This document shows positions 525-26,384 of a stretch of DNA of 64,000 nucleotides, piece by piece. Positions within the stretch are counted from its first letter, which is position 1, and every line of letters starts with the position of its first letter. This DNA is from Octopus sinensis (lineage: Eukaryota): assembly GCF_006345805.1 (NCBI RefSeq), contig NC_043009.1, forward strand, positions 40,424,001 to 40,488,000, written 5' to 3'. The position numbers and the translations under genes were made by a program. The notes under the pieces were generated by a model, which saw only the letters and a program-made list of their open reading frames with translations, was not told the DNA's origin and made no database searches.

Positions 525-814
525 AAAGCCTTGTAAAAGGATTTTGTAGACGGAAACTGAAAGAAACCCGCCGTCTATATATGTGCGTGTGTGTGAATAT
601 TTGTGTGTATGTTTGTTTGTCCCTACACCATTGCTTGACAACCGATGTTGGCGTTTTTAATGTACCTCGTAACTTAGCGGTTCGGCAAAAGAAACAGATA
701 GAATAAGTACTAGGCTTACAAAGAATAAGTTCTGTGGTCGATTTGATCGACTAAAGGCGGTACTCCAGCATAGCCGTAGTCATATGACTGAGACAAGTAA
801 AAGAATAAAAGAAT
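525..814 (+). mobile_element. SINE family A, 5'-truncated
   Basis: Matches the body and tail of the full copies (gacggaaactgaaagaa...gtaacttagcggttcggcaaaag...gactgaaacaagtaaaagaata). Confidence 0.85.
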
Positions 815-848
815 ATATACGTAAGTGTATATGTACGCATATATATAT

Positions 849-881
<33 letters not shown>

Positions 882-915
882 GCGTTTGTCTATGTGTGTG
901 TGCATGTGTATGCTT

Positions 916-4111: not shown

Positions 4112-4419
4112 CTTCCAAGGACTAATATTGAACTCTAAAAGCATAAAGACTCTACAATGTATTGGTATACTTATTTATTAATTTTTGTATATAAGTATTA
4201 TTATTTTTTTGAAAAAACATTGTAAATTTCTTTTTTCCCATTCCTTAATTAAAAAAAAATTTTTTCTCCTTCCAAAGCTTGAAAATTTGCCTTGTTATAA
4301 AAGCCGGTTTGATTTATTCTTTATTCTTTTTTAATTTTTCATACAACCATTTTTATTCAAATTTACTTTCAAATTAGCATTCTGCCTTACTATAATTTTT
4401 CCTCTCCTTCATATATCAA

Positions 4420-5041
4420 TATATATATATAATTATTCAACAACAATTAAGGAATGGCCTTAATAGGCCATTCGGCCCACTAGAAGAAGCAGCCAGGACT
4501 CAAACCGCTAAGTAGTAGTAATTCAGAAATTAAATGAAAATTTAAAAACATTTACCCTAATTCATCTTTAGACGATGCATCGTTTCGGTGTTTTTAATGG
4601 CAAACCAGCTTAATTAAATTAAATTAAGTCAATCTACCAAAGGCTACACCTCATCAGTAAAGAAACCAGGAGGGACAGATATACACGAGGCATCTGTATC
4701 AATGCCCTCGGAATATCTGCCCTAAAATTTTCAAAACCATCGTATTCGCGCCAACTTATCAGCAGTAAATATAAACTGCTGATTCAATCTCAGAATTAGT
4801 CAGAAAATCATCAATTAATCAATTTAGGGTAGCAAAAATTCAATAGAAATTTATCGCTACCAGCGGTCTAGTGGGAAAGAGAAAATAGTCAAAGACTATA
4901 TATATAAATTCAACAACAATTAAGGAATAGTCTTAATAGGCCATTCGGCCCACTAGAAGAAGCAGCCAGGACTCGGCCTATTAAGGCCATTCCTTAATTG
5001 ACTATTTTCTCTTTCCCACTAGACCGCTGGTAAATTGAAAT

Positions 5042-5043
<2 letters not shown>
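4420..5043 (-). mobile_element. Non-coding hammerhead-containing retroelement (retrozyme-like / non-autonomous Penelope-associated), 473-bp unit
   Basis: Direct repeats 4435-4501 and 4908-4974 (65/67 identical, period 473). Inverted copy of internal sequence at 4975-5032. (TA)n on both flanks, no ORF, contains the hammerhead. Confidence 0.7.
4556..4670 (-). ncRNA. Type I hammerhead ribozyme (complete catalytic core)
   Basis: Read on the minus strand: stem I 5' UCUUUA (4663-4658), core CUGAUGA (4657-4651), stem II GGUGU (4650-4646) paired with ACACC (4591-4587), GAAA (4586-4583), stem III ACGAUGCAUCGU (4583-4572), C17 at 4571 (GUC triplet), stem I 3' UAAAGA (4570-4565). Stem I extends past a UG bulge with CCUGGUU/AAUUAGG (4670-4664/4562-4556). 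All conserved core positions are intact. Confidence 0.9.
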
Positions 5044-5082
<39 letters not shown>

Positions 5083-5085
<3 letters not shown>

Positions 5086-5237
5086 CGGGCTTCTTTCAGT
5101 TTTCGTCTACCAAATTCACTCACAAGGCTTTGGTTGGAACGAGGCTATAGTAGAAGACACTTACCCAAGTTGCCACACAGTGGGATTGAATCCGGAACCA
5201 TGTGGTTGGGAAGCAAGTTTCTTACCACACAGCCACG
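5083..5237 (-). mobile_element. SINE family A, 5' half
   Basis: Head and core up to gaaagaagcccgtc, ending in (TA)n. Confidence 0.85.
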
Positions 5238-7366
5238 CATGCAGCCCGATGTAAATATTTCATATCGGGACGCTTTCTGCCGTTGGTGGAGACAGCGGGA
5301 AATTATGATATACGAGACACATAAATATATAGAAATAAATGTATATATGCATGTATGTATATATGTATGTATGCATTAACATTTGCAAATATGTATATAT
5401 AATACATCTGTTTATAGCAGAAGATCTTTGTTACTTAGTGTTTGGTCAAAGACACATGGTAAGTCTTTTCCGAGGAGCGATCAGCAGGCCGTGAAATAGT
5501 CCGTCAGGGCCGTCAGCAGACACCTTCCCTCTTGCTTTTTTTTTTCGTATATTAATAATATCAAAGTAACGTGTTTACATTTTTATTTAAATCACAGTCT
5601 GGCTTTGTAATGTGTGTAAATAAATATATCTGCATATATGTAAGTATGTATGTGAATATTTATCTATCTAGCTGTGTGTGTGGGGGGGGGGCGCGTGCGC
5701 GTATGAATGTCTGCATATCCATTCCCTGATAAACTATATAAGACGTATTTATTTTCATCAGACTTGAAACGATAGAGTCAAATCGAATCCAGTGGGATTT
5801 GAACTCTAATGTATGAGATTTCAAATTGATATACGTTAATGTTTGCCGACAGTAAACATGGCTGTTCTAACTCTAGAAATAGCATCACAAGAAACTAATG
5901 CAATATTGCCTAAAGCAACAGAAGTTGTTAAGAAACATTTCCATCATTACTTCTTCCTCAAGCGACTGAAACCAAATAATTTCATATGAATTACTGCTTG
6001 TATGTTTAATATCTAAATGAATTTCACATAGTTTTCCTTACATATTTCATTCATTGAACGATGATGATTCATTTCAATACATTTTTTTAGATACTGTAGC
6101 ACAATAAAAAAGAAAATAAAACCCAGGTAGATTTACAGGATCGGGAAAGCGTTGGACACAATAACCATCGGCATTTCGCGTTATAAGTTTAATATTCCGA
6201 GTTCGATTCTGATTTGTGTAAATTTTGCTTTTCACCTTTCGTGGTCGATAAACTAGTACCATTTCAATCAAGAACCAATGCCAATTCAATTTTTCGCCAT
6301 GTTCTTATGTTAGAAATCAATATTGTACTCTAAATGGATTATGGTATGGACTAGAAAGCTAGAGCTATGAAACAGCTTCCATACCAATCTGCAAATCTGA
6401 CTATCCTTGTTTCCGTATGGAAACAAGCATAGCCATGTTGTGGATCGGTTCAATTTTTCTGAGCGCAAGATATAATAACTTATCATGTTTATTTCAGCTC
6501 TCCAAGTTCAAATTCCATTACTGGCACCACTTATTTTCATGTCCCTTATGTGCTAAAATAGAACACCAGTCCAGAGCGAGTGATCGTTTGGTAGAATTTT
6601 TAGGGCATCAACGTACGAGATTTACTTGCATCTGTTCCAACTCTTCGAGTTGTAAATTCCTGTGATGAACTTCATCAATCGCTCGGTTTAGCACAATCTC
6701 TCGGTACTAGGATACCTTTTGCAGAGTTTACTCTCCCCCAAGTTTTCCGGTCAGGGTTCCTGGAAGCCCTTACAGTATAAATAGCCATGAAAGCCGTCCC
6801 TCCTTCTGTGATGAAGCTGTAAAACACCCAGCTCTCTGTACTAGAAATATTTACACATAGTATAAGAAAGCACCAATTTTTCTTCAGCAAAATGTTTGAC
6901 AATTCTGTAGAGAATCCTCATTGATCTCTTTCATTGACACTCAGACGTGCGTTGTAATCGATTCCTGTACATCGCCAATATTTTATCGACCCAGCACTTA
7001 TAAAAGAAAAATACACTGTGCTAAATAGGGATCAATATTGATCATTTATTGCAGATTCGCACAGTTTAAGGGTGATGAATGAGCAAAATCGTTAGGGATT
7101 CGGGTAGAATCCCTCGTGGTATATGTTCTGCTTCTGAGTGGCTTCAGTTTCAAATCCAATCGAAGCTTTACTTATCGTTTTGGGGGTCGATTATTAATGT
7201 TTCAATTAACTATTGAAGCTAAATTCCTCTCGCACCCGCTCTTTTCCTTCTCTCCTGCCTTCTCTTATCTCTCTCTCTCTCCCTTATCTCCCTCCCTCTC
7301 TCTCCCTTATCTCCCTCCCTCTCTCTCCCTCTTTCTGTCTCTCTCTCTCTCCCACTATATATATAT

Positions 7367-8495: not shown

Positions 8496-9826
8496 AATTC
8501 AAAGCCAAGCTGGAGCTAGCAAATCATTCTCATGGAAAAAGTTTTATGTTATCAGAACTGTTCAGAGATAATCCAATGTACAGCAGAACAAGAAAAGGAA
8601 ATAAAATAAAGAATAAAAAAGAGGAAAAAATACATCGATCGAAAAGGAAGTTACAAAGTAACAATTACCACCCGTTGCCTGATAAACGTTCAATCAATGT
8701 TCTATCTTTTCCAAGAAAGTTTAAATACTACAACTATAATCTATAATTTTCAGTAATGCTCTTTTTAAATGTCCATAAGTTCTGTTGAATGGGATTTAAG
8801 GAAGGTTAGTGTTAGCAAGTTTTTGTATTCTTTGATCGTGGATATATGATTTTAACGAAGCAGGCCTAAAGCAATGTATTCACAGACGTAACTTCCTACT
8901 ACCAACAACCGAGACTCCGACGCCGTTTTCTTGTCTGAACGAAACACGTTACTTCTTATAAGAGTTCGATGAGTCCACCCTTAAATCAACGCAGGGGTGT
9001 TAATGTCTGTCACTACAACACAAGTGTACGTTATCGTTGACCCAACGGTTAGATTGTTGGGCTCGGGATCATCGGGTCGTGGGTTCGGTTCTTGGACCAG
9101 GTAGCGTGTGTTGTCCTTAAGCAAAGCACTTCATTTCACATTGCTGCAGCGTAATCTGCTAAAAGCAAACACCAGTGGTACTTGGAATTTATTGCTGCAA
9201 CGGATTGGCGGCTCGTTCAAGGTGGGGGTAGTGGTATCTTGTCCTTTCAGTGTAAATGTCTTGTAAGCCCGGATGAGATTCGGCCTTCCGAGCCTGAAAG
9301 CTTGAAACATAAACCAATCCCCTGATGTGGTCCACTATGCAACCATTCAACGCAGTTAATTTCAGAGTATAAGAGAAAAAGTTCTTCTCTTTGGTTATAT
9401 TTAGCACACTGAAAACCAGTCTACTCAAGACTTATTAGGGACTTCATATGTAAGGTATAGAAAGCTAGATTTAATTTTTACTTGCCACCGATGTAAGCTT
9501 AGTGAAGGCACGTGTCATGGTGTTTAGGGTATTAAACCCATGATCCAGTACACTCGGCTGTAATTGAGTAACCCTGCAACGGAGTGAAAATCCCATTCAG
9601 GGAGAATGTTCTGATTTCGGTCACTTATGCGCCAAGGAAACTGGGTAAACAGCTGAATAAGCACGAGCCCTATGACTCGGGGGAGTAATATCCAGAGGTT
9701 GATACTGACAATGATAATAATGATAATGATGATGACAATGATGATGATAGTGGTGGGGGTGATGATGATAATGATGATGATGGTGGTAGTGATCATGATC
9801 ATGATCATGACGACGACGACGACGAC

Positions 9827-9857
<31 letters not shown>

Positions 9858-9897
9858 GTGGTGGTGATGGTGGCAGTGGTGGTAGTGGTGGTGGTGG

Positions 9898-9929
<32 letters not shown>

Positions 9930-10784
9930 GTAGTGGTGGTGATGGTGGTGGTGATAGTGATGTTGGTGATGATGAATAGGATGGGGAGGCTTATTCAGGA
10001 TGATGATGATAATGATGATGATGATGTGATGATGATGATGATGATAATATGATGATGATGATGATGATGATGACGACGATGACGCCGATGACGATGACTA
10101 CGACAACGATGATGAAGTAGGCCTCACCCGTGATATGCTAATGCTTCTCAAGCTGAAAATAAGTGATACACAACACAAGACTTAAAATAGTTAACGCCAG
10201 CAAAAATGAAAATTATACTTTTCGTACGCTACCGAAATTCTAATAATATTTCCCCGTTAGTGTATTTCGCAGAAGGCAAAGAACGTTTACGAGTCTTTTT
10301 ATTCATTACGAACAATTCATGTTAAAGCAACGATATTTTCTTTCATTCTATGAATATTGGCCGTCTATTAGCTAATATTCGAAAAGAATTTTATCTTATT
10401 GCGTGCATAATTCTAATCAACTCGAAAACAAGATTATACATCTCTAGTTGGCATCAAAACTTGGTTAATTTTTGTTGCTGTTTTTTTATTTCATTTTATT
10501 ATTTTTTTTTATTTTTTGTTTTACCTTAAACACCTGTAGAAAAATAAGAAACTGCTATTTCCCAAAATGTTATGTTACTAGATGCATTTAGTTATTTAGA
10601 TACTTTCATTTTCTCAAAGTGAGTCTGCTGAATTAACGAGTGTCTACTTCTTCACAGTTCCATTTACCTCTCAAAGGCATATATATTATCTACCTTTCAA
10701 AGAAACTATGCTATTAACAGTCGTTCTTTATCACAATACCTAGTCAACGATGTGACATAGCATATATCTATGTTTGTGGGCGTA

Positions 10785-12992: not shown

Positions 12993-13024
<32 letters not shown>

Positions 13025-13143
13025 CATTATTATTATTATTATTATCATTATTATTATTGTTGTTGTTGTTATTGTTATTATTATTATTATTATTATTATC
13101 ATTATTATTGTTGTTGTTGTTATTGTTATTGTTGTTGTTATTG

Positions 13144-13174
<31 letters not shown>

Positions 13175-13215
13175 TATTATCATTATTATTGTTGTTGTTG
13201 TTGTTGTTATTGTTA

Positions 13216-13246
<31 letters not shown>

Positions 13247-13311
13247 CATTATTATTATTATTATTATTATTATCGTTATTATTGTTGTTGTTGTTGTTGT
13301 TATTGTTATTG

Positions 13312-13381
<70 letters not shown>
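12993..13381. repeat. Compound (TAT)n/(TGT)n/(CAT)n microsatellite
   Basis: Direct reading. Confidence 0.95.
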
Positions 13382-13678: not shown

Positions 13679-14353
13679 TCATTTCTACTCTAGGCACAAG
13701 GCCCAAAATTTTGGGGAAGGGGGCCAGTCGATTAGATCAACCCCAGTACGCAACTGCTACTTAATTTATCGACCCCGAAAGGATGAAAGGCAAAGTCAAC
13801 CTCGATAGAATTTGAACTCAGAATGTAAGGACAGACGAAATACCTATTTCTTTACTACTCACAAGGGGCTAAACACAGAGAGGACAAACAAGGACAGATA
13901 TAGGTATTAAGTCGATTACATCGACCCCAGTTCGTAACTGGTACTTAATTTATCGACCCCGAAAGGATGAAAGGCAAAGTCGACCTCGACGCAATTTCAA
14001 CTCAGAATGTAAAGACAGACGAAATACCGCTAAGCATTGCGCCCGGCATACTAACGTTTCTTATTTCTTTACTGCCCACAAGGGACTACCCACAGAAGGG
14101 ACATACAAGAACAGACAAATGGATTAAGTCGATTATATCGACCCCAGTGCGTAACTGGTACTTATTTAATCGACCCCGAAAGAATTAAATGCAAAGTCGA
14201 TCTCGTACGAATTTGAACTCAGAGAGTAATCTTTTCTACTCTAGGCACAGGGCCGGATAATTTAGAGGAGAGTACCAGTCGATTAGATCGACTCCAGTAC
14301 GCAACTAGTACTTATTTTATTGACCCCGAAAGGATGAAAGGCAAATTCGACCT
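13679..14353 (-). mobile_element. SINE family B multimer (three linked units plus a separate 3' fragment)
   Basis: The unit gagttcaaattc...gtcgactttgcctttcatcctttcggggtcgat recurs four times, with ~65-bp tttgtccttgtttgtcc linkers. Confidence 0.85.
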
Positions 14354-14483
14354 CTTCTTTCTCTTCTTTATCTTCGTTTTCCTCTTCTTATTTCTCTTCT
14401 TCTTCCTCTTTTTCTTTCCCTTCTTCCTTTCTTCTTATTCCCTCTTCTCCTCCTTTTCTTCTTCATCTTTTTCTTCTTCTTCT

Positions 14484-14517
<34 letters not shown>

Positions 14518-14606
14518 TTTCTTCTTCATCTTCTTCTTCTTCTTCTTCTTCTCCCTCTTCTTCTTCTTCTTCTCCCTCTTCTTCTTCTTCTTCTTCTTCT
14601 TCTTCT

Positions 14607-16050: not shown

Positions 16051-16100
<50 letters not shown>

Positions 16101-16228
16101 CATCATCATCATCATCATCATATCATCATTCATTATTATTATATTATTATTATTATTATTAATATTATTATTAGTATTATTATATTATTATTATTATTAT
16201 TATTGTTGTTGTTGTTAATATATTATTA

Positions 16229-16274
<46 letters not shown>

Positions 16275-16294
16275 TACTATACTATTACTATTAC

Positions 16295-16335
<41 letters not shown>

Positions 16336-16345
16336 TTATTACTAC

Positions 16346-16420
<75 letters not shown>

Positions 16421-17459
16421 TATTATTATCATTATCATTATTATCATCATCATCATCATTATTATTACTGGAAAATATTTTTGTTTATCTTTCATCTGTT
16501 CTACTTTTCTCTCTCCTTCATCTCATCCTTCGCACTTCCTCCCGCACTTTCTCTACATCTACCTATCCATATCTTTTCTAATTTGGGTGGCGGGGCGGAT
16601 ATCCAGTTCTGTCGGATTCTCGCTATGAAAATAGAGATTCTTTTTCTCTGGATAGACTGGGATAGTTCTCAACTACTTACACTTGACAGGCATAAAGTCT
16701 GGTATTTTTAGAAATGGAATGCGAGATTACATGTTCAGTCTCTTCTCATTATTATTAGTGATGCAAATGAAGTAAAATTGCTTTAGTTAGAAATCGAAAC
16801 CGAGATGCGAAATTATTTAACAAGATGGTAATAGATAAAAACTCGCTTAGTAATAGAAACTTTTGGTTAATGTCTAGGTTGCAAGATATAAGTATAGCAG
16901 TATACGTAATACAACTGATTAAAGTCTTGGGCGATATGTTTTCGGGCAAGATACCTATTTATACTTGGAGATGTAAGCTGCTAGAGCACTCTAATGATGA
17001 CGGAATGGAAACTTTCCAGTCTAAAGGCAAGCTTAGTATCGACTCAGACTTTTATGAATTTCATTATGTGTGTGTGTATGTGTGTGTGCGTGTGTGTGTG
17101 TGGTGTATGTGTGTGTGTCTGTGCGTGTGTGTAGAAACGGTGATGATAGGCTTGGGAATCCGTTAAACAATTTTGATTTTCATTTGTATCCATTCCGCTA
17201 TTTTTAAGCCAATAACGTTCTGAAGAAAGGCATGGTGATTACAACTTCCATTTTATTTTGTCCGATGCCAATAAGGCTTACGACTCTTCGATTGACACAA
17301 CCATTCACTCGTCCATCCATTTTCTCCGCTCACAATTTTTGTGAGGACTGGGTGTAGTCCTGGGACACCTCCTCCATATCGTCTCATAACAACAATTACG
17401 CTTTTCCGCTGGATACCCAAGCGAGGCTAACTGAAATTATCGATATTATCTAGATATGT

Positions 17460-25431: not shown

Positions 25432-25470
<39 letters not shown>

Positions 25471-25654
25471 CATGATAGATCGGTAACCACTACACGCATT
25501 TTTTTTCTCTCCTTGTTTCTTTCTGTGTTCCTTTCTGTGGAAGAGCGTAGGCTGGAAACGTAAAATACTTTTTCAATTTCCCGCGTTATACTATACATCT
25601 GTTTGTTTTCTACACACCTGTCTTCGTCTTGTGTATTTTTTTCGTGAATCTCCC

Positions 25655-25686
<32 letters not shown>

Positions 25687-25880
25687 TCATGATAGATCGG
25701 TAACCACTACACACATTTTTTTTCTCTCCTTGTTTCTTTCTGTGTTCCTTTCTGTGGAAGAGCGTAGGCTGGAAACGTAAAATACTTTTTCAATTCCCGA
25801 GCGTTATACTAATACATCTGTTTGTTTTCTACACCACCTGTCTTCGTCTTGTGTTTTTTTTTCGTGAATTCTCCCTACAT
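25471..25880 (+). mobile_element. Tandem pair (period 217 bp) of a (TA)n-flanked Penelope-pseudo-LTR-like unit with a degenerate minimal hammerhead motif
   Basis: Copies start at 25471 and 25688. Each contains tttCTGTGGAagagcgtaggctgGAAACGTAaaa. Confidence 0.55.
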
Positions 25881-26191
25881 ATATATATATATATATAAAC
25901 GTTGATTGTGAATTGACAAGGCTACCAATTGATTCATGTGAAAAGATTCTATAGACTTATTCAAGAGTACGACGTAGCATAGAAGCATTGCTACACGTCT
26001 TCATTTCTCATCCAAAAGAATATTTGTCCACCAATCCGGTGTTGAGCACTCGTTCTTACTGATCTCTATCTGTCTGTCTCTCTCTCCTTCTCTCTCCCCC
26101 TCTCTCTCTCTCTCTCTCTCTCTCTATGTATATATATATATATATACACACACACACAGAGTGAGAGGAATTTTTTGCAAGTTTCAGGTGC

Positions 26192-26263
26192 CTCTCCGGC
26201 GGGAAATCGAACCCCGGTCTCCCGCGTGACAGACGAGTATACTTACCGTTGTACTACTGAGGA
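26192..26263 (-). pseudogene. tRNA-Asp(GTC), probably a pseudogene
   Basis: TCCTCAGTAGTACAACGGTAAGTATACTCGTCTGTCACGCGGGAGACCGGGGTTCGATTTCCCGCCGGAGAG folds as a 72-nt cloverleaf with a GTC anticodon. It has two acceptor-stem mismatches, two G-U pairs in the anticodon stem, C61>T, and no oligo-T terminator. Confidence 0.85.
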
Positions 26264-26384
26264 AAATAGAGGGGAAGCACCTTGCTGAAACCTGGACACT
26301 ACTTTATGTTCCCAAAATATCTAGTTTAATCAGGTCATACAACCAAGTTCGAACAGTATCACTCCGTTTAGTGGCTCTGGCTGC

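What the first reader, a model, noticed from the sequence alone, without database searches (positions are those of the whole stretch)
4556..4670. Intact, extended type I hammerhead ribozyme on the minus strand
Seen: every conserved core base (CUGAUGA, GAAA, GUC) is present with correct pairing. Stem I is 6 bp + UG bulge + 7 bp. Stem II is GGUGU/ACACC, extended by a long hairpin (UGGUAGAU/GUUUGCCA, CUUAAUU/AAUUAAG) after an AGCCUU/UUAAAA internal loop. Stem III is closed by the canonical A-U and C-G pairs. Predicted cleavage is between 4571 and 4570. Established: natural hammerheads use stem I bulge to stem II loop contacts for fast cleavage. Inference: this is, or recently was, an active self-cleaving RNA. 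Surrounding repeats are decayed, yet this core carries no mutation.
Basis: partly seen in the sequence, partly recalled or inferred. Interest (0 to 1): 0.93.

Follow-up and report, generated by a model that had tools for sequence, protein, structure and literature searches.

The report
Hammerhead ribozyme inside a mobile repeat
The flagged sequence is a complete hammerhead self-cleaving RNA motif, but it is one young copy of a roughly 475-bp non-coding mobile repeat of a known kind (a "retrozyme", probably copied by Penelope-like retrotransposons), present a few hundred times in this animal genome.

Summary
Minus strand 4671-4555 carries every hammerhead (HHR) core base, helices I-III and a GUC site with cleavage between 4571 and 4570. 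My descriptor finds this one site in the window and none in 200 shuffles. Rfam misses it because a 54-nt insert extends helix II.

It is not a lone gene. It lies in a non-coding element (4411-4974): 1.17 copies of a 475-bp, 35% GC unit. The family has roughly 240-265 HHR-bearing copies in a 2.7-Gb animal genome. Copies show a fixed 3' end, 5' truncation, partial tandems, adjacent inverted 5'-truncated arms and (TA)n targets. These are the hallmarks of Penelope-like element (PLE) insertion, and RT+GIY-YIG PLEs are abundant here.

Across subfamilies, helices II and III and the helix II extension covary. The ten strictly required core bases never vary; only U4, N7 and H17 do.

- About 60% of copies read CCGAUGA (U4C).
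- The window's canonical U4 lineage is nested among C4 lineages.

This locus has one HHR, so it cannot release a monomer. Cleavage is untested. Verdict: new member of the metazoan retrozyme kind.

The parts
4555..4671 (-). Complete type I hammerhead ribozyme motif. C17 is at 4571, with predicted cleavage between 4571 and 4570.
   Evidence: family covariation
4651..4657 (-). Core box CUGAUGA (C3-A9). Position 4 (4656) is U here but C in about 60% of family copies.
4583..4586 (-). Core GAAA (G12, A13, A14, A15.1).
   Evidence: no subfamily-level variation in 53 copies (G12 differs in one copy)
4572..4583 (-). Helix III: 4 bp plus a UGCA loop. CGAUGCAUCG is a 10-nt palindrome that can form a 12-bp helix III in a double-hammerhead dimer.
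   Evidence: dimer MFE -80.1 against 2 x -33.8; 15.3-16.3 covaries, GC 22 / AU 28
4587..4650 (-). Helix II (5 bp, 4650-4646 with 4591-4587), a 6x6 internal loop, and a 42-nt extension hairpin (4639-4598).
   Evidence: 10.1-11.1 GC 29 / AU 14; extension 94-99% paired, one pair AU 37 / GC 8
4664..4667 (-). GGUU in the stem I 5' strand. Proposed to pair with AGCC (4645-4642) of the helix II internal loop, as a pseudoknot-type helix I / loop 2 contact or as an alternative conformer.
Evidence: 93.9% of cells paired; C-G 32, U-A 13, U-G 5.
4642..4645 (-). AGCC, the 5' side of the helix II internal loop and partner of 4664-4667.
4411..4974 (-). The non-coding repeat element that carries the ribozyme: 1.17 copies of a ~475-bp unit, 35% GC, no ATG ORF of 30 aa or more, ending in a TA-rich 3' tail (4411-4421).
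4897..4974 (-). Upstream partial-tandem segment, a direct repeat of 4422-4501 (95% identity).
4422..4501 (-). 3'-terminal segment of the unit, partner of the direct repeat. It contains the hairpin GAAUGGCC/GGCCAUUC.
4975..5043 (+). Inverted, 5'-truncated and internally deleted fragment of the same unit. It abuts the 5' end of the main copy, and its outer end lies near unit position 82-84, next to (AT)n.
5044..5083 (.). (AT)20 microsatellite flanking the insertion. Together with the TA-rich run at the other end, it is the presumed (TA)n target.

Best explanation
The motif is a bona fide type I hammerhead ribozyme. It is carried by a ~475-nt non-coding, non-autonomous retroelement of the metazoan 'non-LTR retrozyme' kind.

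**Shown**

- The element is a dispersed family of about 240-265 ribozyme-bearing copies.
- The copies have the insertion architecture described for Penelope-like elements.
- The family's source lineages kept the hammerhead fold through compensatory changes.

**Inferred life cycle**

1. Loci with two or more tandem units are transcribed.
2. Each ribozyme cuts after C17/A17. It acts either alone (4-bp helix III) or as a double hammerhead through the palindromic helix III.
3. This releases 475-nt monomers with 5'-OH and 2',3'-cyclic phosphate ends.
4. A host RtcB-type ligase circularises the monomers into a highly paired circular RNA.
5. A Penelope-like RT/GIY-YIG enzyme copies that RNA into (TA)n microsatellites. 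The products are 5'-truncated partial tandems with inverted arms.

**This locus**

The window's copy is such a product: one young 1.17-mer with a single, canonical-core ribozyme inherited from its source. If read through, it could cut the transcript once at 4571/4570, but it cannot release a monomer.

For: **The motif**

- Complete and unique in the window; 0 hits in 200 shuffles.
- HHR fold within 2.4 kcal/mol of the MFE. The predicted dimer MFE is the double hammerhead.

**The family**

- 43 scored copies at 92-100% identity.
- 239 matches to the 3' half.
- About 113 U4 and about 152 C4 matches to stem I plus core.

**Covariation in 53 distinct copies**

- 93.2% of cells paired, against 26-48% when the partners are slid.
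- 10.1-11.1: GC 29 / AU 14.
- 10.2-11.2: GC / AU / UA.
- 10.3-11.3: UA / CG.
- 15.3-16.3: AU 28 / GC 22.
- Extension pair: AU 37 / GC 8.

**Core conservation**

- Strict core positions variable at subfamily level: 0 of 10, against 42 of 107 elsewhere, p = 0.009. The only variable core sites are U4, N7 and H17.
- The C17A subfamily keeps a legal GUA site.

**Insertion architecture and unit**

- Constant 3' end, variable 5' ends of 0.26-1.9 units, inverted 5'-truncated arms and (TA)n flanks. These match the PLE hallmarks in PMC8557442.
- Tandem HHR pairs 471-479 bp apart at six or more loci.
- Unit is 35% GC. Its circular MFE is -137.6 kcal/mol, z = -7.5. No ORF.

**Candidate partner**

- PLEs are abundant and some are intact: 147 GIY-YIG matches, open frames up to 883 aa. 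One ORF read has RT plus GIY-YIG.

**Source lineage**

- The window's exact core haplotype occurs at 4 independent loci, so a source copy carried it.
Against: - No cleavage, transcript or circular RNA can be tested here.
- No Rfam hammerhead model reaches threshold. The best is the type III model at 12.9 bits, E = 3.4, in the wrong topology.
- About 60% of copies have U4C, which lowers activity in vitro (PMC3088659). Cleavage may therefore not be needed for amplification.
- Arrays are short (1-3 units), unlike the long multimers of described retrozymes. The unit slightly exceeds the published 150-450 bp range.
- The element's 3' end lies about 149 nt downstream of the cleavage site, so cleavage does not define the genomic termini.
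- No PLE partner was identified. There is no sequence similarity to 30 PLE loci, and only 2 of 70 family loci adjoin PLE ORF fragments.
- Copies share descent, so each covarying pair reflects few events, and several are CpG-type transitions.
- Part of the sample was collected with patterns that fixed GAAAC.
Confidence: 0.75

Rival explanations
1. **Crippled relic.** The family once had a working hammerhead, but its successful lineages carry U4C and no longer depend on self-cleavage. On this view, the conserved helices serve another role, such as recognition by the reverse transcriptase or RNA stability. The window's canonical core is then a CpG-to-TpG back-mutation of no functional consequence, in a dead, untranscribed insertion.
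For: - CCGAUGA occurs in 69 of 81 near matches.
- Exact matches: 66 C4 against 26 U4.
- C4 sits in a CpG, so C-to-T is the favoured mutation.
- U4 copies cannot form one clade (AU p about 1e-58; at least 3 changes), and the window's clade is nested in a C4 grade.
- The HHR region is no better conserved than the rest of the unit.
- The locus has only one ribozyme.
Against: - The other ten strict core bases never vary at subfamily level. The variable sites N7 and H17 are exactly the ones a working hammerhead tolerates.
- The A-U to G-C change in helix III creates two CpGs, which runs against mutational bias.
- A U4C hammerhead is reported to retain enough activity in vivo for viroid infectivity (PMC3088659).
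- U4 lineages amplified afterwards: 4 loci of the window's haplotype and 35 of the A10.1 type.
Confidence: 0.2
2. **PLE terminal repeat.** The unit is not an independent element but the terminal repeat (pLTR) or another fragment of an autonomous Penelope-like element. The ribozyme would be that element's own.
For: - PLE hallmarks of insertion.
- PLEs carry hammerheads in their pLTRs.
- One family copy lies head-to-head with a PLE ORF fragment (L063).
Against: - 68 of 70 family loci have no RT/EN-like sequence within about 0.7-1.5 kb.
- There is no similarity between the unit and 30 PLE loci.
- The genome's PLE-type hammerheads found by Rfam are minimal CUGAAGAG types unrelated to this unit.
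- Copies end at the same 3' position without any ORF.
Confidence: 0.04
3. **Satellite-like DNA.** The repeat spread by recombination or segmental duplication, with a fossil ribozyme and no RNA intermediate.
For: Tandem and inverted arrangements, and association with microsatellites.
Against: - Copies are dispersed over nearly all large contigs with unrelated flanks.
- They have a constant 3' end with graded 5' truncation.
- Arrays are only 1-3 units long.
Confidence: 0.01

Closest known systems
Metazoan non-LTR retrozymes (coral Acropora, mussel Mytilus, axolotl; Cervera and de la Pena 2020, PMC7229834)
   Same: - Type I hammerhead in a short, AT-rich, non-coding repeat.
- Tandem copies.
- Highly self-paired monomer.
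- Weak helix III capped by a palindromic tetraloop.
- Co-occurrence with PLEs.
- Like the mussel ribozymes, no archetypal loop 1 / loop 2 sequence motifs.
   Different: - Unit of 475 bp, against 150-450 bp.
- Arrays of only 1-3 units, mostly 1.05-1.9-mers, and only a few hundred copies.
- Helix II continues through an internal loop into a 42-nt hairpin.
- U4C in most copies.
- Expression as circular RNA not shown.
Hammerheads of Penelope-like elements and their insertion architecture (PMC8557442; Cervera and de la Pena 2014; Lunse et al. 2017)
   Same: - 5' truncation, partial tandems and an adjacent inverted 5'-truncated copy.
- (TA)n target bias, and an extra tail at one end.
- Type I topology.
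- Capacity to act as a dimer.
   Different: - No RT/EN ORF.
- The hammerhead has full-size helices I-III instead of the minimal, helix III-less form.
- No sequence similarity to the PLE loci sampled here.
Satellite hammerheads of newts, Schistosoma (Sm-alpha) and cave crickets
   Same: Type I ribozyme in repeated DNA. Short palindromic helix III allowing double-hammerhead cleavage.
   Different: Dispersed insertions rather than long satellite arrays. Different helix II architecture.
Pseudoknot-stabilised hammerheads and natural core variants (Perreault et al. 2011, PMC3088659)
   Same: - A Watson-Crick contact between the helix I region and loop 2 is a documented way to align helices I and II.
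- U4C is a documented natural variant that is weak in vitro but tolerated in vivo.
- N7 and H17 variation is tolerated.
   Different: - Here the loop 2 partner is the 5' side of an internal loop, not a hairpin loop.
- The helix I partner can also pair within helix I.
- The contact is inferred from covariation only.

Membership tests
Hammerhead ribozyme, type I | Conserved core: C3 U4 G5 A6 N7 G8 A9, G12 A13 A14, A15.1-U16.1, H17 | tested here: met
   All present in the window copy. Family-wide, only U4, N7 and H17 vary.
Hammerhead ribozyme, type I | Three helices around the core, helix I open-ended, supported by covariation | tested here: met
compensatory changes in helices II and III and the helix II extension. 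Proximal helix I is invariant.
Hammerhead ribozyme, type I | Score at or above the gathering threshold of an Rfam hammerhead model | tested here: not met
   no hit to RF00163. RF00008 scores 12.9 bits against a threshold of 48.5. The alignment shows a 48-nt insert in helix II and a wrong helix III/I assignment.
Hammerhead ribozyme, type I | Tertiary contact between helix I and loop 2 | tested here: inconclusive
   A 4-bp GGYU/ARCC pairing covaries: C-G 32, U-A 13, U-G 5. In 39 further U4 copies it reads U-A 34, U-G 5. This amounts to essentially one evolutionary event, and the pairing could instead be an alternative conformer.
Hammerhead ribozyme, type I | Mg2+-dependent self-cleavage 3' of position 17 | not testable with these tools
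   Needs transcription and cleavage assays.
Metazoan non-LTR retrozyme | Type I hammerhead within short tandem repeats (150-450 bp, dimers to multimers) | tested here: inconclusive
   The unit is 475 bp. Tandem HHR pairs 471-479 bp apart occur at six or more loci. Most copies are 1.05-1.9-mers. The window's copy has 1.17 units and one HHR.
Metazoan non-LTR retrozyme | Low GC, non-coding, no LTR/PBS/PPT | tested here: met
   35% GC. No ATG ORF of 30 aa or more. Only an ~80-nt partial-tandem overlap. PBS and PPT were not specifically searched.
Metazoan non-LTR retrozyme | Monomer RNA highly self-paired | tested here: met
   Circular MFE -137.6 kcal/mol, 64% paired, z = -7.5. A further covarying hairpin lies outside the HHR.
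Metazoan non-LTR retrozyme | Co-occurrence with autonomous PLEs | tested here: met
   147 GIY-YIG matches with open frames up to 883 aa. RT plus GIY-YIG in one ORF.
Metazoan non-LTR retrozyme | Expressed as unit-length circular RNA | not testable with these tools
   No transcript data available.
Penelope-like element (autonomous) or its pLTR | RT plus GIY-YIG ORF flanked by the repeat; minimal hammerhead | tested here: not met
   No ORF in the element. No PLE-like coding sequence in the window or in 68 of 70 family loci. No similarity to 30 PLE loci. Helix III is full-size.

The most novel reading that the evidence does not exclude
This family may represent a structurally distinct hammerhead architecture and a natural experiment in ribozyme core evolution.

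- **Architecture.** Loop 2 is an internal loop from which helix II continues into a conserved 42-nt hairpin. Docking to helix I is by a 4-bp Watson-Crick pseudoknot. This form is invisible to the current Rfam models.
- **Core evolution.** A U4C core persisted through several subfamily radiations while the stems were kept by compensation. The canonical U4 re-arose at least twice at a CpG. Each time it was followed by amplification and by a G-C to A-U switch at 10.1-11.1.

If so, self-cleavage rate would be a selectable trait of the element.
Probability: 0.25. Interest if true: 0.6.

Novelty: new member of a known kind. Interest (0 to 1): 0.35.

Why it matters
Hammerhead-bearing retrozymes are an established class, so the bare finding is ordinary for an invertebrate genome. 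This family adds four things.

- **Link to PLEs.** It shows clean, copy-by-copy evidence that a retrozyme-type element carries the full insertion signature of Penelope-like elements: partial tandems, inverted 5'-truncated arms and (TA)n targets. That bears on the still-open question of who mobilises animal retrozymes.
- **Blind spot in model-based searches.** Rfam-based scans miss hammerheads with long helix II inserts.
- **Core polymorphism.** It offers a naturally polymorphic core (U4 or C4, C17 or A17, G-C or A-U at 10.1-11.1) with known phylogenetic order. This is suitable for testing how much cleavage activity such elements need.
- **Taxon.** The paper library searched holds no description of a hammerhead retrozyme in an octopus. 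The genome's identity is my inference only. It rests on its 2.7-Gb size, microsatellite richness, and PLE proteins that most resemble those of bivalve molluscs.

Tried and rejected
- **Rfam.** I searched at gathering threshold on the whole window, and in E-value mode on 601 and 141 bases. There was no valid hammerhead hit. I attribute this to the helix II insert, not to absence of the motif.
- **C/D-box snoRNA-like hit inside the unit.** It lies at 4756-4818(-), scoring SNORD52 at 26.3 bits, E = 0.002. I rejected it. The C box is TGATAA in several subfamilies. The 'D box' is one strand of a covarying hairpin, ATCAGCAG/CTGCTGAT changing to ATCGGCAG/CTGCCGAT.
- **Chance motif.** Rejected.
- **Relation to the genome's Rfam-detectable hammerheads.** There are 7 hits of the minimal CUGAAGAG type. 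They share no similarity with the unit.
- **PLE partner by sequence.** There is no similarity between the unit and 30 GIY-YIG loci beyond a TA-rich 24-mer. A shared TTGTTGAAT near the 3' ends of two PLE loci and of the unit is too short to count.
- **Rooting the U4/C4 polarity by terminal branch lengths.** Abandoned. The first 30 loci were chosen for similarity to the window, which biases apparent age.
- **Relatives elsewhere.** An exact degenerate 26-mer is absent from the metagenome and viral collections. The other whole genomes on hand are prokaryotic.
- **More U4 subfamilies (TCTGG..., CCAGG...).** Part of this was recovered through pattern output.
- **Gene context.** Ten long frames of the window have no Pfam domain, and the window holds no PLE-like coding sequence. 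I could not tell whether the site is intronic or intergenic.

Full report
**1. The observation**

In order it holds:

- a 13-nt helix I 5' strand;
- CUGAUGA (4657-4651);
- a 5-bp helix II, GGUGU/ACACC;
- a 6x6 internal loop, then a long hairpin;
- GAAA (4586-4583);
- helix III of A-U, C-G, G-C, A-U closed by UGCA;
- U16.1 and C17 (4571);
- the helix I 3' strand.

Cleavage would fall between 4571 and 4570.

I wrote a type I descriptor requiring core boxes, at least 4 bp of helix II, helix III, UH and at least 5 bp of helix I. It finds this one site in both strands of the 64-kb window. It finds none in 200 dinucleotide-preserving shuffles.

The hammerhead fold scores -31.4 kcal/mol, against -33.8 for the MFE. 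The MFE differs only in swallowing the core into helix I.

Two molecules are predicted to form the classical double hammerhead. The palindrome CGAUGCAUCG makes a 12-bp helix III, giving -80.1 against 2 x -33.8 kcal/mol.

**2. Why Rfam is silent**

No hammerhead family reaches its gathering score in the window. None appears even at E <= 10 in 601 bases.

On 141 bases only the type III model appears, at 12.9 bits. It aligns CUGAUGAG...CGAAAC across a 48-nt insert and assigns the outer helices wrongly. The cause is the helix II extension, not a defective core.

**3. What carries the motif**

The window lies in a 2.72-Gb, 13,516-contig eukaryotic assembly. It is very rich in microsatellites. The 141-nt region has 43 scored matches at 92-100% identity on many contigs.

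Comparison of 3-kb loci shows that the repeat extends over window 4411-4974. An ~80-nt direct repeat (4897-4974 and 4422-4501, 95% identity) defines a unit of 475 bp, so the window holds 1.17 units.

Immediately 5' of the element, in the ribozyme's sense, lies an inverted, 5'-truncated and internally deleted fragment of the same unit (4975-5043). Next comes (AT)20 (5044-5083). The 3' end runs into a TA-rich stretch.

The element has no ATG ORF of 30 aa or more and is 35% GC. As a circle its unit folds to -137.6 kcal/mol with 64% of bases paired, z = -7.5.

**4. Insertion architecture across loci**

In the 30 loci the sense-strand 3' end is constant. It falls at unit position 475 and is followed by (TA)n.

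The 5' end varies, giving lengths from 0.26 to 1.9 units. Many copies are partial tandems of 1.05-1.5 units.

About ten of 27 distinct loci carry an adjacent inverted 5'-truncated arm. Its outer end is at unit position 82-87, again abutting (AT)n.

Hammerheads 471-479 bp apart in tandem occur at six or more loci.

Craig et al. describe exactly this set for Penelope-like elements: strong 5' truncation, partial tandems, an inverted 5'-truncated copy at the upstream end, an extra tail at one end, and a (TA)n target bias (PMC8557442).

The genome is full of such elements. There are 147 scored GIY-YIG matches out of 4,846 candidates, with open frames up to 883 aa. One ORF read has both RT and GIY-YIG domains. 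Its named relatives are bivalve proteins at 44-48% identity.

I found no sequence similarity between the unit and 30 PLE loci. Only 2 of 70 family loci adjoin PLE coding fragments. The unit is therefore a free-standing non-autonomous element, and its partner remains unidentified.

**5. Is the hammerhead maintained?**

Whole-genome pattern searches give:

- 239 matches to the 3' half;
- 81 near matches to the 5' half;
- for stem I plus core, 26 exact CUGAUGA and 66 exact CCGAUGA; with one mismatch allowed, about 113 U4 and 152 C4.

Parsing 53 distinct copies shows at least nine subfamilies. On the alignment (A1) the hammerhead structure pairs 93.2% of cells, against 26-48% when the partners are slid.

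Compensatory changes occur at these pairs:

| Pair | Counts |
|---|---|
| 10.1-11.1 | GC 29, AU 14, GU 3 |
| 10.2-11.2 | GC 36, AU 3, UA 3 |
| 10.3-11.3 | UA 38, UG 7, CG 2 |
| 15.3-16.3 | AU 28, GC 22 |
| helix II extension pair | AU 37, GC 8 |

Linked coordinates confirm that GACGU goes with ACGUC and GAUGU with ACAUC.

The ten strictly required core positions show no variant shared by three or more copies, against 42 of 107 other positions (p = 0.009). The core positions that do vary are U4, N7 (U/C) and H17 (C/A). N7 and H17 are free in working hammerheads, and the C17A subfamily keeps a legal GUA site.

Three caveats apply. Copies share descent, so each covarying pair reflects few events. 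Several changes are CpG transitions. Loci L038-L077 were found with a pattern that fixed GAAAC and the helix III/I context; it did not cover the CUGAUGA half.

**6. The U4/C4 polymorphism and the window copy**

Most copies read CCGAUGA. Perreault et al. state that U4C considerably decreases activity in vitro yet permits viroid infectivity in vivo (PMC3088659).

In an ML tree of 44 near-full units, the window's copy groups with L003 (U4). The next nearest are C4 copies L004 and L009. The U4 clade (the window type, the A10.1-U11.1 type and the GUA type) is nested inside a grade of C4 subfamilies. A second U4 group sits in the most divergent clade.

U4 copies cannot be one clade (AU p about 1e-58), and at least three changes are needed.

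C4 is part of a CpG, so C-to-U is the favoured direction. The window's U4 is therefore most simply derived, a reversion if the primordial ribozyme had U4. The root is not secure, so retention of an ancestral U4 is not excluded.

The exact 20-mer of the window's core occurs at four loci with unrelated flanks. The canonical core was thus present in a source copy and did not arise in situ.

The whole unit is evenly conserved, and the nearest copies are 97.7-98.3% identical. The intact core reflects youth, not selection at this locus.

**7. A correction to the drawn structure**

RNAalifold on A1 paired GGYU of the helix I 5' strand with ARCC on the 5' side of the helix II internal loop.

- For that pairing, 93.9% of cells pair: C-G 32, U-A 13, U-G 5. 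None of 500 shuffles reaches this.
The central pair is a C-A mismatch in 36 of 53 copies.
- In 39 further U4 family copies listed by a pattern search, the key pair is U-A in 34 and U-G in 5, never mismatched.
- Among the 81 matches, A at the loop position occurs only with U on the helix I side.

I read this as a Watson-Crick helix I / loop 2 contact of the pseudoknot type described by Perreault et al. It lies six pairs from the core on helix I and five on helix II.

It could instead be an alternative, inactive conformer. It rests essentially on one compensatory path, C-G to U-G to U-A. In the window copy the contact would be G-C, G-C, U-G, U-A (4667-4664 with 4642-4645).

**8. Mechanism and verdict**

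Steps shown here:

- a complete hammerhead;
- a dispersed non-coding family with PLE-type insertion architecture;
- conservation of the fold in the source lineages.

Steps inferred:

- transcription of tandem loci;
- self-cleavage as a monomer or a double hammerhead;
- ligation to a 475-nt circle;
- reverse transcription by a PLE enzyme into (TA)n.

This matches the published model for metazoan non-LTR retrozymes (PMC7229834, PMC7761336). It also matches the recent proposal that these are non-autonomous PLE derivatives (bioRxiv 10.64898/2026.07.22.740005).

The window's locus is a single-ribozyme 1.17-mer, so it is a product rather than a source.

The finding is real but belongs to a known kind. 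Its unusual points are the extended helix II, the likely pseudoknot contact, the predominance of U4C and the short arrays.

Noticed in passing
window 4756-4818 (-): C/D-box snoRNA-like match inside the repeat unit (SNORD52, 26.3 bits against a threshold of 45, E = 0.002 on 601 bases). The C box is not conserved across subfamilies, and the 'D box' is one strand of a covarying hairpin, so it is probably spurious.
   Followed up: yes
window 4770-4795 (-), unit positions ~102-127: An 8-bp hairpin, ATCAGCAG/CTGCTGAT, outside the ribozyme. It changes to ATCGGCAG/CTGCCGAT in the divergent subfamilies, with a G-U intermediate in others. This is a second conserved structure in the unit RNA.
   Followed up: partly
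window 5085-5240 (-): A tRNA-like SINE-type repeat containing GGTTCCGGATTCAATCCC, directly upstream of the (AT)n that flanks the element. Similar sequence recurs near the element in many other loci (L001 2000-2192 matches). I did not resolve whether this adjacency is chance or a shared (TA)n target preference.
   Followed up: no
window 26190-26264 (-): A tRNA-Asp(GTC) gene (Rfam 41.7 bits; ARAGORN). It is the only Rfam hit in the window at gathering threshold.
   Followed up: no
window 25445-25897: 2.1 copies of a 217-bp tandem repeat at 94% identity, bounded by (AT)n runs.
   Followed up: no
window 9711-10097, 12994-13380, 14353-14606, 16051-16467: Very long trinucleotide microsatellites: (ATG)128, (TTA)129, (TCT)85 and (ATT)140. 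They create the long spurious open frames in that area.
   Followed up: no
L107:2786-2960 and L107 minus strand from 442; L082 minus strand from 174: PLE loci carry a short CCGAYGA...GAAAC motif at a palindromic (inverted-copy) junction. It is followed by ...TTGTTGAAT... and (TA)n, reminiscent of the C4 core and of the unit's 3' end TTGTTGAAT plus (TA)n. The shared stretch is too short to call homology.
   Followed up: partly
L063:2-663 (-) next to the unit copy at about 640-900 (+): A PLE ORF fragment (aa 17-173 of the L084-type protein, 59-65% identity) lies head-to-head with a 5'-truncated copy of the hammerhead unit. This could be a chimeric insertion or chance adjacency. I could not extend the locus.
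   Followed up: no
L031-L037 (e.g. G000:C16:25146363-25146408 and 25146794-25146839): Seven Rfam Hammerhead_1 hits elsewhere in the genome (34-48 bits). All are minimal CUGAAGAG...GAAAC types, two of them 431 bp apart in tandem, and none is related to the unit studied here.
   Followed up: partly
G000:C1:21795152-21796455 (L007/L008/L013): The most complex locus of the family: an inverted 1.5-unit arm joined head-to-head to a 1.9-unit arm, with three full hammerheads and one partial, all C4.
   Followed up: partly
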